63,651 nucleotides of DNA, filler included, from Octopus bimaculoides (GCF_001194135.2; 5 parts of 5 records of this genome joined end to end with filler, not necessarily neighbours in it); one strand, 5' to 3'; positions 42,845 through 63,651 are shown, numbered from the whole stretch's first letter. Notes: a model not told the origin generated them from the letters alone. Translations and numbers: made by a program.

Positions 42845-43076
42845 ACGAAAAAAAAAAAAGAACAAAAAAGGTACCAGCGATAGATCGGGGCTTCTGAGGT
42901 CGGAGCGTGGCCTGATCATCGCTTCATTTGTATTATCCCTGTTAATTCCATTCAATTTTTTATATTTTATTTAATTTTTAAAAGTCACATTAAATGTAAA
43001 ATCATACCGCATTACTGATCCCATCAGTTGTTCTGTCCATTTCTATGTTTAGCCCCCGGTGGGCAATAAAGAAATT

Positions 43077-59657: not shown

Positions 59658-59692
<35 letters not shown>

Positions 59693-59714
59693 TATACGCA
59701 CATATGTGTATATT

Positions 59715-59903
59715 TTTGTGTGCTTGTGTTTGTGCCATCACGATCGCTTGACCACCGATGCTGGTCACCGTCACTTAGACGTTCGGCAAAAGCGTGCGAT
59801 AGAATAAGTACTAGGCTTACAAAGATTAAGTCCTTGATCCGGTTTGTCCGACTGAAAGTATGGCCGCAGTCAAAATGATTGAAACAAATAAAAGACTAAA
59901 AGA
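59715..59903 (+). mobile_element. SINE-B 3' half, diverged
   Basis: cgcttgaccaccgatgctgg...gttcggcaaaagcgtgcgatagaataagtactaggcttacaaag...tggccgcagtcaaaatgattgaaac. Confidence 0.85.
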
Positions 59904-60401
59904 ATACATATATGTATGTATCTAAGTATGTATGTATTTATGTATGTAGGAATGTATGTATATTGGTTTCTGGACTGTTGTCACCCTACAACATTGAAGC
60001 CCATTCCGAAAAATTAATACACTTTTTCTCAACAACGTGATGCGGAATTCTTCTGCCAATTGACCGGCTAGAAATTGTAGCCAAATCTCACTCCACTTTC
60101 GCGACTACCGCCATAGATATCCATCCAATCCCTTTTATATGAAATTGCGTAATTTTCAAGGTATGAATATCTCTAAGTAAACTTAGCGTTCGTCGCCCTG
60201 CTGGGGGAAACAATAACAGCCTCAACATGCGACAACAGCGTTATCATATAATACAAATGAGTATTAAGTGAAATAGACCTGGATCTGTGCTTATGAACCT
60301 CTTTATTATCCCATTACTTCCAATTTCTTCACTGTCCCATTGTTTAGCCGATAGTCTGCTGAACTGTCTTCAAATGTATGGGCACCTCTCTCTCTCTCTT
60401 G

Positions 60402-60477
<76 letters not shown>

Positions 60478-60991
60478 NNNNNNNNNNNNNNNNNNNNNNN
60501 NNNNNNNNNNNNNNNNNNNNNNNNNNNNNNNNNNNNNNNNNNNNNNNNNNNNNNNNNNNNNNNNNNNNNNNNNNNNNNNNNNNNNNNNNNNNNNNNNNNN
60601 NNNNNNNNNNNNNNNNNNNNNNNNNNNNNNNNNNNNNNNNNNNNNNNNNNNNNNNNNNNNNNNNNNNNNNNNNNNNNNNNNNNNNNNNNNNNNNNNNNNN
60701 NNNNNNNNNNNNNNNNNNNNNNNNNNNNNNNNNNNNNNNNNNNNNNNNNNNNNNNNNNNNNNNNNNNNNNNNNNNNNNNNNNNNNNNNNNNNNNNNNNNN
60801 NNNNNNNNNNNNNNNNNNNNNNNNNNNNNNNNNNNNNNNNNNNNNNNNNNNNNNNNNNNNNNNNNNNNNNNNNNNNNNNNNNNNNNNNNNNNNNNNNNNN
60901 NNNNNNNNNNNNNNNNNNNNNNNNNNNNNNNNNNNNNNNNNNNNNNNNNNNNNNNNNNNNNNNNNNNNNNNNNNNNNNNNNNNNNNNNNNN

Positions 60992-61038
<47 letters not shown>

Positions 61039-61051
61039 TGCATGTATGTAT

Positions 61052-61365
61052 GTATGTCATTATTCAGTTTTTATTTCAAGATTTCTTGCCAATAGAGAAA
61101 GAGCCGGTTTTTAATCTAGGTCCAAGGCTTCATCAACCACAACACATACATGTATTTTACATGTATGTGTGTACATGTGCAGTATTTGGAATTGGTGCAT
61201 GTGCAGATATGCATGTTTGTTTTATGTATATATTCTCATGCATCTCGTTGCATGTCTGGACATGCGCATATATACTTCAATGATAAACTCCTGGAAAGTT
61301 TTACAACCTTTCAAGATTCCAGTGATGGCTTGAATCTGTTCTCTTTGAATCAGCTTTCCCCTTTC
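61052..61365 (+). repeat. Dispersed repeat family F, copy 2
   Basis: Aligns with 30786-31080 on both sides of an internal variable simple repeat. Confidence 0.8.
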
Positions 61366-61444
61366 ACGTTTTGAGAAGCCTAATTCCTCAAAACCGGTAC
61401 TTAATCAATGTGCTACAGTAGGTATGTTTGTATGTATGTTTGTA

Positions 61445-61732
61445 TTTCTTTAATTTGCTTCAGTCATTTGACTGCGGCCATGCTGCAGTACCGCTTTTAG
61501 TCGAACAAATCGACCCCAGGACCTAAACACACCAACATCGGTTGTCAAGCGATGGTGGGGGTACAAATACAGACAAACAAACACAGACATATATCTGTCC
61601 ACCAAATCCACTCACAAGGTTTTGGTCGGCCCGAGGCTATAGTAGAAGATATTTGCCCACGGAGCAGTGGGACTGAACCCGGAACCATGTGGTTGGTAAG
61701 CAAGCTACTTACTATATGGCCACTCCTGCGCC
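61445..61732 (-). mobile_element. SINE-B, near full length, with the central microsatellite deleted
   Basis: Head ggcgcaggagtggccatatagtaagtagcttgc... and 3' end cagcatggccgcagtcaaatgactgaagc. The two halves are joined by only ~20 bp. Confidence 0.88.
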
Positions 61733-61803
61733 TGTGTGTATCAAATTAACTAAAGTCATTGACGTTTTGAGAATAGGCTTTTCAGGATGCTGACACTTCT
61801 CAT

Positions 61804-61829
61804 CTGATGATGCCAACCACTGGCGAAAC
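61804..61829 (+). ncRNA. Hammerhead-like core (partial)
   Basis: CTGATGA-T-GCCA(accac)TGGC-GAAAC. Stems I and III are not convincingly recoverable. Confidence 0.35.
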
Positions 61830-62136
61830 TTTGAAGCCGTTCTTTCTAAAATTATATAAAATATCGGACTTTCCCTTCTTTTTTTTTTTTTTGTAGTTAA
61901 ATTTCAGTTTTTTATGCTTCAAAGGGATTCCTAATAAATATGCATATTTATTAATATGTATATAGATATATATTTGTTTTGCAAGATTTTTTATGTGAAA
62001 TCGTGTGTTGAAACAGATGTTGTTGTACTTGGGGATGGTCATATTGCCAATTTAGATAATAAAAACACACGCACTGTATATTTGGTGTTAATTTGCTTCA
62101 GCTTTATATTACATTACATTACATTAATCATATTTC

Positions 62137-62181
62137 GGCCAGAGTTCTTTCGTCACACTTCTGTGACCTCATCAGTGGTCC
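62137..62181 (-). ncRNA. Minimal type I hammerhead ribozyme motif
   Basis: GGACCA-CTGATGA-G-GTCACA(GAAG)TGTGAC-GAAAG-AA-CTC^TGGCC. Stem II is a perfect 6 bp, stem I is 5 bp with a bulge, and the CUC triplet fits NUH. Confidence 0.6.
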
Positions 62182-62611
62182 TTTGCTTTCTTCTTTCTTA
62201 TGTGTGTCCCTCCTTGCTAACGATCAGCCATTTTGTATTTTGTATTCCTATTGTATGTGTTTACGCATGCGTATCCCTCTATGTGTGTCTATGTTTTATA
62301 TATACATATATATATATATATATACCGTATTTTAACGTGCGTAAGGAACCCTTGTGTTTAAGGAATCCCCTACTTTTGGGGGGTTAAAATTTGGAAAAAT
62401 GGTTTTGTAAGGGATTATAAGACTGTCCATATACAAGAAACTCGCGTCTTTGCCTCATGTTAGTTTCTCGCCGCTGGACAAAGCGTGCTGGTTGGCTTGC
62501 ATTCCCCGTAACTTAGCTTTTCGGCAAAAGGAGACCAGAGATTGAGTACCTGACTTGAAATAATTACTGCTGTGGATATGAAGGATCCAAGTCATTGTAA
62601 GTGCCCACAAT

Positions 62612-62648
62612 TTTGACGCGCTACCTATTCTGCCAGCTCGCTGCCTTA
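62612..62648 (-). mobile_element. Isolated SINE-A head (third unit of the tandem cluster)
   Basis: aggcagcgagctggcagaataggtagcgcgtc. Confidence 0.6.
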
Positions 62649-62661
62649 ATAACGATGGTAA

Positions 62662-62861
62662 ACCTTTCTACAATAAGCACAAGGCCTGAAATTTTATGGG
62701 AGGGTGACTAATTGATTATATTGACTCCACTGTTTCACTGGTACTTAATATATCGATCCCGAAAGGACGAAAGGCAAAGTCGACCTCGGCGGAATTTGAA
62801 CTCAGAACGTAAAGACAGACGAAATACTGCTAAGCATTTCGCCTGGCGTGCTAACGTTTCT
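62662..62861 (-). mobile_element. SINE-A with the standard 3' end, head starting at agaaacgttagc
   Basis: Matches the family A body and the ggccttgtgcttattgtagaaagg terminus. Confidence 0.9.
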
Positions 62862-62862
62862 T

Positions 62863-63095
62863 ATTTCTTGATTGCCCACAAGGGGCTACACATAGCGGGG
62901 ACAAACAAGGCCAGACAAACGGATTAAGTCGATTATATCGACCCCAGTGCGTAACTGGTACTTATTTAATCGACTCCGAAAGGATGAAAGGCAAAATCGA
63001 CCTCGGCGGAATTTGAACTCAGAACGTAGCAGCAGACGAAATACCGCTAAGCATATCGCCCGGCGTGCTAACGTTTCTGCCAGCTCGCCGACCTT
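62863..63095 (-). mobile_element. SINE-A variant with an alternative, Tx1-like 3' tail
   Basis: Family A head and body up to tataatcgact, then taatccgtttgtctggccttgtttgtccccgctatgtgtagccccttgtgggcaatcaagaaat. Confidence 0.88.
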
Positions 63096-63109
63096 AACGA
63101 TAATAAAGG

Positions 63110-63300
63110 CTTGAAATTTAGGCACAAATCCAGCAACTTCAAGGAGGAGGATGGTTGATTACAACGACTCCAGTGTTCTGTTGGTGCCTATTTTATTGAT
63201 CCCAGTGGAAATAAATGCAAAATTAACCTCAGCAGGATTTGAGCATAGAATATAAAGAGCAAGAGGAATATTGCAAAGCATTTTGTCCGATATTTTAACG
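63110..63300 (-). mobile_element. Old degenerate SINE-A-like copy
   Basis: gaaatttaggcacaaatccagc...ttttattgatccc...gcaaaattaacctcagcaggatttgagc...gcaaagcatttt follows the family A minus-strand layout. Confidence 0.6.
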
Positions 63301-63593
63301 ATCCGTCAATAACATCAACGTCTAAGATGTCTATAAAGTGAGGAGGGATTTCGTCTACTTGACCAAATTATTGCACAATTGCAGAGATATCTCTAAGGTT
63401 CCACAATAAGCATGAGAAGAAAAGCTGTCTGGCAAATATGTGGCTGTCTTTGACAAAAGTGTGTGTGTGCGTGTGTGCGTGCGTGTATGATAGAGTCTTG
63501 ATGTTCCTGTATGTTTGTTTCATCGTGTATATATGTATAACTAGCGTCTGTGCATGGGCTTTTGTATATATGTGTATTTGTTTACTTTTCGTT

Positions 63594-63651
<58 letters not shown>

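What the first reader, a model, noticed from the sequence alone, without database searches (positions are those of the whole stretch)
62863..63095. SINE-A variant carrying the 3' end of the Tx1-like LINE: candidate non-autonomous partner
Seen: the SINE tail ctatgtgtagccccttgtgggcaatcaagaaat (62895 to 62863, minus) matches the LINE terminus ctatgtttagcccccggtgggcaataaagaaat (43043-43075) at 29 of 33 nt. The GCCC/GGGC stem is intact in both, and two of the four differences fall in its 5-nt loop. Other SINE-A copies here (1075, 12757, 43077, 62662) end differently, in ...gccttgtgcc..agtagaaa plus (ATT)n. Known: SINEs that share a 3' tail with a LINE are mobilised by it through a 3' stem-loop, best documented for L2, CR1 and RTE partners; L1-clade SINEs usually rely on poly(A). 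Inference: one SINE head and body has acquired two alternative tails, and so two mobilising LINEs, one being a stringent-type Tx1.
Basis: partly seen in the sequence, partly recalled or inferred. Interest (0 to 1): 0.78.

Follow-up and report, generated by a model that had tools for sequence, protein, structure and literature searches.

The report
Octopus SINE subfamily with hairpin tail
This is one copy of a common short mobile element (SINE) of octopus genomes with its own version of a small conserved hairpin tail. The subfamily and the hairpin are real, but the claim that the tail is borrowed from a Tx1-type LINE could not be checked here.

Summary
The sequence is as described. 63095-62861 (minus) is a full-length 235-nt SINE copy ("B-type") ending ...CTATGTGTAGCCCCTTGTGGGCAATCAAGAAATAA. 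The neighbouring copy ("A-type", 62860-62663) ends differently.

The SINE-plus-tail unit is not unique to this locus. The same unit lies at three other loci with unrelated flanks, one in Octopus vulgaris with a 21-nt target-site duplication. At least six further public ORFs are antisense translations of it.

The 4-bp stem around the loop CTTGT is supported by compensatory changes across 15 tails. That result also shows the A- and B-type tails are diverged versions of one hairpin-plus-AGAAA tail, not two unrelated acquisitions.

In this window the B copy is the left half of a head-to-tail composite. Its 3' end is fused to an A-type copy that starts at about SINE position 19. The same junction recurs in two diverged public ORFs. 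The composite is flanked by a 12-nt direct repeat.

The LINE half of the claim is untestable here.

Verdict: a real, ordinary SINE subfamily of the stringent-tail kind. The Tx1 partnership remains an untested lead.

The parts
62861..63095 (-). Full-length B-type SINE copy (the finding), about 235 nt. The 3' boundary is ambiguous by 1-2 nt because the A's at 62862-62861 could belong to either neighbour.
   Evidence: Read directly. Matches over its whole length, tail included: 92.7% to O. vulgaris L001 10143-10374, 84.5% to L002, 74.4% to L005.
63078..63095 (-). First 18 nt of the SINE (aaggtcggcgagctggca). Present in B, absent from the fused right-hand copy A.
   Evidence: Coordinates; alignment A2.
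62995..63020 (-). Box-B-like motif GAGTTCAAATTCCGCCGAGGTCGA, the best-conserved stretch of the head.
   Evidence: Identical in the window A and B copies and in L001; L002 has one change and L005 several (A2). No tRNA is called by ARAGORN or Rfam at E up to 10.
62896..62928 (-). B-type-specific 3' module (cttaatccgtttgtctggccttgtttgtccccg), upstream of the 33-nt tail.
   Evidence: Shared by all four B-type copies and absent from A-type copies (A2; A3).
62863..62895 (-).
   Evidence: one match, 0 expected by chance.
62874..62886 (-). Tail hairpin GCCC-CTTGT-GGGC.
   Evidence: 4-bp stem. Across 15 A- and B-type tails, 78.3% of cells pair against 56.4 +/- 5.1% in shuffles (0/500). 3 of 4 pairs change on both sides.
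62663..62860 (-). A-type SINE copy starting at about SINE position 19, fused directly to the 3' end of B. Its own tail is AGGC-CTTGT-GCTT...GTAGAAAGG.
   Evidence: 86.5% identical to B over 148 nt, then diverges.
62675..62687 (-). A-type tail hairpin AGGC-CTTGT-GCTT. It has the same loop as B; the stem pairs are swapped relative to B.
63096..63107 (-). Direct repeat TTTATTATCGTT, immediately 5' of B. It is also the degenerate (ATT)n end of copy C.
   Evidence: 10 of 12 identical to the repeat at 62651-62662.
62651..62662 (-). Direct repeat TTTACCATCGTT, immediately 3' of A. Candidate target-site duplication of the B+A composite.
   Evidence: It shares the non-(ATT) letters ATCGTT with the upstream repeat.
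63096..63310 (-). Older, diverged A-type-like copy C, head-to-tail upstream of B. Tail TGGA-TTTGT-GCCT...(ATT)n-like.
   Evidence: Alignment A3; hairpin at 63132-63120. The 5' limit is approximate.
62615..62647 (-). 33-nt SINE head fragment D (aaggcagcgagctggcagaataggtagcgcgtc), directly after the (ATT)-like linker downstream of A.
   Evidence: (repeat D6).

Best explanation
The region is a full-length copy of a multi-copy octopod SINE subfamily (B-type). It shares head and body with the neighbouring A-type copies. Its own 3' module ends in a small hairpin (GCCC-CTTGT-GGGY) followed by AATAAAGAAATAA, with no poly(A) and no microsatellite. Shown: the unit recurs at independent loci, at least once with a long target-site duplication. 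The hairpin is kept by compensatory changes. The A-type tail is a diverged version of the same hairpin-plus-AGAAA tail. Inferred: the element is transcribed from its internal promoter and copied by the reverse transcriptase of a LINE that recognises this 3' hairpin and starts at a fixed 3' end (stringent-type target-primed reverse transcription). The A and B tails then follow two related LINE lineages, or one LINE that tolerates both. Inferred for this locus: the B copy is the left half of a B + A(from position 19) composite. The composite arose either by an end-to-end template jump of the reverse transcriptase from the 5' end of one SINE RNA to the 3' end of a B RNA, or as a copy of an already dimeric family. 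It entered the degenerate (ATT)n tail of the older copy C as one unit, using the A-type 3' end. The identity of the LINE, including whether it is Tx1-clade, is open.
For: Four DNA copies of head, body and tail have unrelated flanks: the window, L001 (O. vulgaris chromosome OX597819.1), L002 and L005/L006. L001 10143-10375 is flanked by agtatattttcaatgttttca / agtatatgttcaatattttca, 19 of 21 identical. 26 representative public ORFs match the antisense frame of B. tblastn places six of them on the B tail and three more on the B-specific module. Stem: 78.3% of cells paired against 56.4% in shuffles (0/500); covariation score 0.643 against 0.270 (0/500); slid controls 28-50% paired; 3 of 4 pairs change on both sides (a smaller set gave the same trend). 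The A and B 3' modules align over about 45 nt, beating 2000 shuffles in 2 of 4 comparisons (0/2000 and 3/2000) and marginal in a third (116/2000) (also A3). Composite: the B end ...GAAATAA abuts GAAACGTTAGC of A. The same junction occurs in P0138, where BLASTP runs ungapped through RANVS|YFLI, and approximately in P0130. A 12-nt direct repeat, 10/12 identical, brackets B+A. Background: a shared 3' stem-loop is the usual mark of stringent SINE/LINE pairs (PMC3747384, PMC4176376). Mollusc SINE families commonly swap or diversify LINE-type tails (PMC11481361, PMC4758252).
Against: No LINE 3' end from this organism was seen, so LINE-derived and stringent are inferences from anatomy. The stem is only 4 bp. 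Single-sequence folds are not better than shuffles (z -0.02 to -1.44). In 3 of 4 B copies the minimum-energy fold prefers a longer competing helix, CTTG.TTTGTCC with GGGCAA.NAAG. The covariation comes from essentially two or three tail types, so few independent events lie behind it, and I read the stem off these same sequences. tRNA origin of the head was not detected by ARAGORN or Rfam. The 12-nt repeat lies in (ATT)n-like low-complexity sequence and continues into two SINE heads, so it may be a shared tail-head junction rather than a target duplication. L002 carries a B copy fused to an A-type copy at a different point (about position 106), so not all fusions share one origin. The copy count rests partly on protein-level inference from ORFs clustered at 50% identity.
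Confidence: 0.6

Rival explanations
1. One reading: one SINE head and body captured two unrelated alternative tails from two different LINEs. The B tail is the 3' end of a stringent-type Tx1-clade LINE, which mobilises it.
For: The B tail is a conserved, precisely ending 3' module with a supported hairpin. L1-Tx1 LINEs are recently active in O. vulgaris: 13 families, 421 insertions (PMC13282606). The one clean insertion has a long 21-nt duplication, as L1-group endonucleases often give (the link to L1 is my own knowledge). Two of four B copies sit in (ATT)n-like microsatellite, and some Tx1 lineages target microsatellites (PMC4494074).
Against: The LINE is outside the piece and could not be found elsewhere. 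The Tx1 assignment was made by eye. The two tails are homologous, not unrelated. CR1, Dong-R4 and RTE are also recently active in octopus (PMC13282606), and hairpin-plus-short-repeat ends are classic for CR1/L2-type elements. The four insertion sites share no common target.
Confidence: 0.25
2. The same LINE mobilises both A- and B-type copies. The B tail is a SINE-internal variant of the A tail that lost the microsatellite, and no second partner exists.
For: The tails share the same loop, a preserved stem, a shared AGAAA and about 45 nt of homology. B and A RNAs appear joined end to end in composites, as expected if both sit in the same reverse-transcription complex.
Against: Three of the four stem pairs differ between the types, and the ends differ: a fixed ...GAAATAA against (ATT)n. 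In stringent systems such differences usually change recognition. L001 shows that B can insert on its own end.
Confidence: 0.2
3. One-off event: an extremely 5'-truncated LINE inserted into a SINE at this locus, so the SINE-plus-tail junction is unique.
For: None, beyond the fact that this locus is a nest of repeats.
Against: The identical body-to-tail junction occurs at three other loci with unrelated flanks and in several public ORFs.
Confidence: 0.02
4. The head-to-tail array C-B-A-D arose by DNA-level tandem duplication or unequal exchange between SINE copies, not by retrotransposition of a composite.
For: Heads are repeatedly preceded by the same (ATT)-like linker, TTTAYYATCGTT(ATT)AAGG, in the window. 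L002 has a looser (ATT)n(GTT)n version. Tandem-like SINE arrangements are reported in bivalves (PMC11481361).
Against: The four units are different subtypes of very different ages. B and A are 86% identical in the shared part, and C is much more diverged. The B|A junction is shared with ORFs that are only about 50% identical to the window, so it was inherited and spread to other loci.
Confidence: 0.1

Closest known systems
Stringent-type SINE/LINE pairs with a shared 3' stem-loop (eel UnaSINE1/UnaL2; zebrafish L2 elements), as reviewed in PMC3747384 and tested in PMC4176376
   Same: Short non-coding element with a defined 3' end without poly(A), and a small conserved hairpin close to the end whose stem varies by compensatory change while the loop stays fixed.
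   Different: The partner LINE has not been seen here, so tail sharing is unproven. The B tail ends in a fixed AAAGAAATAA rather than a short tandem repeat. The stem is only 4 bp.
Mosaic ('jigsaw') mollusc SINEs: bivalve and gastropod SINE families with one conserved body and several LINE-type tails (PMC11481361, PMC4758252, PMC4824008)
   Same: One head and body occurs with more than one 3' module inside one genome, with tandem-like arrangements of copies.
   Different: Here the two 3' modules are diverged versions of one another rather than modules from different LINE clades. Cephalopods were not covered by those surveys.
SINEU / Tx1-Mar in crocodilians (PMC4494074), and the three SINEs with L1-clade tails among 58 known pairs (PMC3472496)
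   Same: These would be the nearest precedents if the partner really is Tx1-clade. SINEs dependent on L1-group LINEs through something other than poly(A) are rare.
   Different: SINEU is linked to Tx1 by shared target preference and shared 5' heads, not by a 3' hairpin. No common insertion target was seen for the four B-type copies.
Octopus SINEs OK, OR1 and OR2 (Ohshima and Okada 1994, as cited in PMC4824008 and PMC4758252), and the 'tRNA-Deu / tRNA-Core / unclassified' SINEs of octopus repeat annotations (PMC8967140, PMC13282606)
   Same: Same host group and abundant short retroposons. The second SINE family in this piece (61435-61745) has the CCTTGGGCAAG core-like motif.
   Different: I could not read the 1994 sequences or any octopus repeat library. 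Whether the B type equals a named family is unknown. No paper I could search describes LINE partners of octopus SINEs.
Dimeric SINEs and chimeric retrocopies made by reverse-transcriptase template jumps (from my own knowledge: Alu-type dimers, U6-L1 chimeras, end-to-end jumping of R2 reverse transcriptase)
   Same: The exact 3' end of one RNA is joined to the 5' part of another, with one pair of flanking repeats around the composite and the same junction at several loci.
   Different: Only three instances of the junction were seen here, two of them only as translated ORFs. The flanking repeat is in low-complexity sequence.

Membership tests
SINE (short interspersed element) | Short, non-coding, dispersed in many copies at unrelated loci | tested here: met
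   About 235 nt. Four DNA copies have unrelated flanks. 26 representative public ORFs derive from the family.
SINE (short interspersed element) | Flanked by target-site duplications | tested here: met
   L001 has a 21-nt duplication, 19/21 identical. The window copy has none of its own; the B+A composite has a 12-nt repeat, 10/12 identical. L002 and L005 are unclear.
tRNA-derived SINE | 5' head recognisably derived from a tRNA, with A and B boxes | tested here: inconclusive
   ARAGORN finds no tRNA. Rfam gives no tRNA match at E up to 1 over the piece or up to 10 over the array. A box-B-like GAGTTCAAATTCC is conserved. Published annotations call octopus SINEs tRNA-Deu or tRNA-Core (PMC8967140).
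Stringent-type SINE/LINE pair | The SINE 3' end is the same sequence as the 3' end of a LINE in the same genome | not testable with these tools
   The LINE lies outside the piece. All five tail matches in the DNA I hold, representing four loci, sit on SINE bodies. That DNA holds no RT-coding fragment. The collection scans found no octopus DNA.
Stringent-type SINE/LINE pair | Conserved stem-loop near the 3' end, kept by compensatory changes | tested here: met
   78.3% of cells paired against 56.4% in shuffles (0/500), and 3 of 4 pairs change on both sides. Caveats: the stem has 4 pairs, there are few tail types, and single-sequence folds are not significant.
Stringent-type SINE/LINE pair | Defined 3' terminus without poly(A) | tested here: met
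   All four copies end ...AA(A/C)GAAAT(A/T)A directly before unrelated flanks.
Tx1-clade partnership | The partner LINE's reverse transcriptase groups with the Tx1 clade | not testable with these tools
   No partner LINE sequence was obtained. A search with a remembered Tx1-like RT segment returned only unnamed non-octopus hits (example L013).
Tx1-clade partnership | Shared sequence-specific insertion target | tested here: inconclusive
   Four sites show no common target. Two lie in (ATT)n-like tails of older SINEs (the window and L002), one in AT-rich unique DNA (L001), and one is unclear (L005).
Dimeric or composite SINE | The same monomer-monomer junction at independent loci | tested here: met
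   B end | head position about 19 in the window, in P0138 (ungapped alignment through the junction) and approximately in P0130. L002 has a different junction.
Conserved-domain SINE superfamilies (Deu, CORE, V, Meta, Ceph) | Central domain matching the superfamily consensus | not tested
A 31-nt stretch is shared between the B type and the second SINE family of the piece (repeat D5).

The most novel reading that the evidence does not exclude
An L1-group (Tx1-clade) LINE of octopus uses stringent 3' hairpin recognition and drives a large tRNA-type SINE subfamily through a shared ...TAGCCCC..GTGGGCAATAAAGAAAT end. A sister LINE with a stem-swapped hairpin and an (ATT)n end drives the A-type subfamily. 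On this reading, compensatory changes in a 4-bp stem divide the SINE population between partners, and the fixed B-type RNA 3' end also serves as an acceptor for end-to-end template jumps that create dimeric SINEs.
Probability: 0.2. Interest if true: 0.6.

Novelty: new member of a known kind. Interest (0 to 1): 0.35.

Why it matters
SINEs make up about a tenth of octopus genomes. Most families there are unclassified and have no assigned partner LINE (PMC13282606, PMC8967140). A tail type that can be traced to a particular LINE would allow the large octopus SINE expansions to be dated and attributed. SINE tails taken from L1-group LINEs are rare: 3 of 58 known pairs (PMC3472496). A Tx1 partner would therefore be a useful additional case of stringent recognition in that group. 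Without the LINE, what is established is more modest. There is a well-defined subfamily, a small hairpin with covariation that links the two tail types, and a recurrent dimer junction.

Tried and rejected

2. Collection scans: the tail pattern gave nothing in metagenome or prokaryote genome contigs. A conserved body pattern gave nothing in metagenome, prokaryote genome or viral contigs. Those collections hold no octopus DNA with these motifs.

3. Protein route to octopus DNA.
- The sense ORF of B gave one O. vulgaris protein and a 20-kb locus.
- An antisense-frame profile gave six short contigs.
- These supplied all the extra SINE copies but no LINE.

4. LINE search.
- A database search with the Tx1-like segment was swamped by unnamed non-octopus hits. 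One that I looked up is an unrelated LINE with an unrelated 3' end.

5. A look-up of a window ORF to find the same locus elsewhere found nothing on record.

6. Literature: no paper held gives octopus SINE or LINE consensus sequences or partners. A full-text search for the tail letters hit only an unrelated paper. The 2015 octopus genome paper is not held.

7. Rfam sub-threshold miRNA, CRISPR and thermoregulator hits are microsatellite or chance matches, and I rejected them.

8. I first considered a target duplication for B alone in the window (CGTT). I rejected it because the letters GAAACGTT after B match SINE positions 19-26 exactly.

Full report
WHAT IS THERE. The piece (59658-63651, with an N gap at 60478-60991) is AT-rich, microsatellite-laden DNA full of short retroposons. 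On the minus strand between about 63310 and 62615 four related units lie head to tail:
- an old diverged copy C;
- the finding's copy B (63095-62861);
- a copy A (62860-62663);
- a 33-nt head fragment D (62647-62615).

B reads aaggtcggcgagctggca... and ends ...ctatgtgtagccccttgtgggcaatcaagaaataa. A is 86.5% identical to B over 148 nt. It then diverges into ...caggccttgtgcttattgtagaaagg followed by a degenerate (ATT)n. The LINE terminus it was compared with lies outside the piece, and nothing like it within 3 mismatches is readable.

ORGANISM. The only database protein matching the sense ORF of B is a hypothetical protein of Octopus vulgaris. Its gene is in fact another copy of the same SINE. 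The window is therefore octopod DNA. I could not fix the species.

IS THE SINE-PLUS-TAIL UNIT UNIQUE TO THIS LOCUS? No. The complete unit, tail included, recurs at three other loci:
- O. vulgaris chromosome OX597819.1 (L001 10143-10374, 92.7% identical);
- a scaffold of an ENA 'metagenome' assembly (L002, 84.5%);
- Logan contigs from two sequencing runs (L005/L006, 74.4%).

Each has unrelated flanks. The L001 copy is bracketed by agtatattttcaatgttttca / agtatatgttcaatattttca, 19 of 21 identical, and ends exactly at ...aaagaaata. That is the signature of an independent retrotransposition that used this tail as its 3' end.

The four tails give the consensus CT(A/G)TGTTTAGCCCCTTGTGGG(C/T)AATAAAGAAATAA. 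The window copy carries two private changes. This consensus matches the window once, against 0 expected in shuffles.

A library-wide HMMER search with the antisense reading frame of B found 26 representative ORFs. Laying them back on B-type and A-type DNA with tblastn gave the following:
- six extend through the B tail (P0130, P0133, P0135, P0136, P0138, P0141);
- three reach the B-specific module (P0144, P0145, P0147);
- at least seven are A-type.

Every occurrence of the tail in the DNA I hold sits on a SINE body.

THE HAIRPIN, AND HOW THE TWO TAILS RELATE. I collected 15 tails (4 B-type, 11 A-type of various ages), centred them on the loop and aligned them without gaps. The pattern is consistent:
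- Loop: (C/A/T)TTGT in 13 of the 15 tails.
- Downstream: an A-rich stretch ending in (A/G)GAAA.
- Four bases on each side of the loop: GCCC/GGGC in B, (A/T)GGC/GCC(T/A) in young A copies, TGGC/GTCA in older ones.

For the 4-bp stem the counts are as follows (the first ten tails gave the same trend):
- cells forming standard pairs: 78.3%, against 56.4 +/- 5.1% in shuffles (0 of 500 reach it) and 28-50% when the partner columns are slid;
- covariation score: 0.643, against 0.270 in shuffles (0 of 500);
- three of the four pairs change on both sides.

The same analysis shows that the A tail carries the same hairpin with swapped pairs.

The last 45 nt or so of the two 3' modules also align (GTC.CCCTC...TTTAG.CC.TTGTG...A.AGAAA). 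The alignment beats 2000 shuffles in two of four comparisons (0/2000 and 3/2000). It is marginal in a third (116/2000) and not significant for an old copy (also A3). B has in addition about 20 extra nucleotides upstream and lacks the (ATT)n.

The simplest description is one tail lineage that diverged, not two unrelated captures.

Cautions:
- The stem is short.
- The covariation rests on two or three tail types.
- I read the stem off these same sequences.
- Single-sequence folds are no better than shuffles.
- In three of four B copies the minimum-energy fold prefers a longer competing helix that uses the same GGGC.

THE LOCAL ARCHITECTURE. In the window the last bases of B (...GAAATAA) are followed at once by GAAACGTTAGCACGCC, which is SINE position 19 onward. 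B has no target duplication of its own.

The pair B+A is bracketed by TTTATTATCGTT (63107-63096) and TTTACCATCGTT (62662-62651). These are 10 of 12 identical and share the same departures (ATCGTT) from a pure (ATT)n.

The same fusion point recurs in diverged relatives. In P0138 a BLASTP alignment with the window's antisense ORF runs ungapped through the junction (RANVS|YFLI against RSNAF|YFLI). P0130 has the tail end joined to the head at about position 20. Both are only about 50% identical to the window at the protein level, so the junction is old and has spread.

L002 shows a B copy followed by an A-type copy beginning near position 106, again after an (ATT)n(GTT)n run upstream.

I read this as follows. 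Composites arise when the reverse transcriptase, on reaching the 5' end or a break in one SINE RNA, jumps to the exact 3' end of a B RNA. At least one such dimer then became a propagating family. The window's composite then entered the (ATT)n-like tail of copy C using the A-type end. End-to-end template jumping by LINE-type reverse transcriptases is established knowledge that I recall; it is not tested here.

Two alternatives are not excluded:
- two successive insertions, with the A type targeting the microsatellite next to B;
- DNA-level duplication of the array.

The repeat is low-complexity and runs into two SINE heads, so its status as a target duplication is uncertain.

THE LINE HALF OF THE CLAIM. 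I could not test it.
- The public contig collections hold no octopus DNA with these motifs.
- The roughly 38 kb of octopod DNA I obtained contains no RT-coding fragment and no tail detached from a SINE body.

That string would therefore match the family consensus at 31 of 33. This is what one would expect of a genuine relative of this tail. It does not show that the string ends a LINE, nor that the LINE is Tx1.

From the literature:
- L1-Tx1, CR1, Dong-R4 and RTE families are all recently active in O. vulgaris, and most of its SINE families are unclassified (PMC13282606).
- SINEs sharing tails with L1-group LINEs are rare, 3 of 58 pairs (PMC3472496).
- The one described Tx1-SINE link rests on shared insertion targets, not tails (PMC4494074).
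- Hairpin ends followed by short repeats are typical of CR1/L2-type partners (PMC3747384, PMC4176376).

The four B insertion sites share no evident target.

COMPARISON AND NOVELTY. This works like a stringent-type SINE, and three of that type's anatomical marks are met: a fixed 3' end, no poly(A), and a covarying hairpin. The defining mark, a LINE with the same end, is untested. One body with several tail variants is the known 'mosaic' pattern of mollusc SINEs (PMC11481361, PMC4758252). tRNA derivation of the head was not detected by ARAGORN or Rfam and remains an assumption taken from published annotations (PMC8967140).

I rate it a new member of a known kind. It would rise to a new variant if the partner proves to be Tx1-clade.

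VERDICT.
- Observation: partly confirmed. The in-piece part is exact; the LINE part cannot be checked.
- Interpretation: partly supported. The subfamily replicates and the hairpin is real. The tails are homologous rather than alternative captures. This copy is the left half of a composite. The Tx1 partnership is untested.
- Interest: 0.35.

Noticed in passing
window 61435-61745 (-) and 59700-59900 (+); L001 1365-1510, 5773-5960, 11223-11630: A second, unrelated-headed SINE family (ggcgcaggagtgg... with a CCTTGGGCAAG core-like motif) is present in several copies. Its tails end ...GGCCGCAGTCAAATGACTGAAnCAAnTAAAAGAnnA. One copy ends ...TAAAGAAATA, the same last 10 nt as the B-type consensus. It also shares a 31-nt internal stretch with the B type (repeat D5). 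This may point to a shared partner or a shared module.
   Followed up: partly
window 62845-62816 (-), and the equivalent place in copy B: The SINE head contains a long imperfect hairpin, GGCGAAATGCTTAGCAGTATTTCGTC (13 pairs). The terminator scan picked it up. It is not tRNA-like and is conserved between copies.
   Followed up: no
window 63096-63107 and 62648-62662; L002 400-423 (-): SINE heads are repeatedly preceded by the degenerate (ATT)n or (GTT)n end of another SINE (C before B, A before D, and in L002). This suggests that microsatellite tails of older copies are preferred landing sites and that arrays build up head to tail.
   Followed up: partly
window 61080-61130 (-): An isolated A-type tail fragment (AAGCCTTGGACCTAGATTAAAAACC) has no SINE body upstream. 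It is probably an extremely 5'-truncated insertion.
   Followed up: no
window 62470-62620 (+): An old, diverged 3' half of the core-type SINE lies in the opposite orientation and abuts head fragment D. It contains GCCCACAA, which by chance resembles the complement of the B hairpin arm.
   Followed up: partly
P0129 (706 aa): A long protein resembling a zinc aminopeptidase carries an antisense A-type SINE translation near its N-terminus (residues about 35-95). This is either exonisation of a SINE or a gene-model artefact.
   Followed up: no
L002 (ENA assembly ERZ23499442, scaffold_285125): A scaffold labelled as metagenomic is octopod nuclear DNA. It holds two SINE families with the same architecture as the window. 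This indicates host or prey DNA in that sample.
   Followed up: no
window 60388-60477, 60992-61058, 59658-59700, 63590-63651: The assembly gap (60478-60991, N) is bordered by (CT)n on one side and (AT)n/(ATGT)n on the other. The sub-threshold Rfam 'miRNA' hits (mir-297, mir-1277, mir-3149) all fall on such microsatellites and are artefacts.
   Followed up: yes
B-type 3' region, window 62861-62916 (-) and the same region in L002 and L005: The minimum-energy folds pair CTTG.TTTGTCC (upstream) with GGGCAA.NAAG (tail end), a roughly 10-bp helix that competes with the small hairpin. The window's private A-to-C change adds a pair to it. There are too few sequences to judge.
   Followed up: partly
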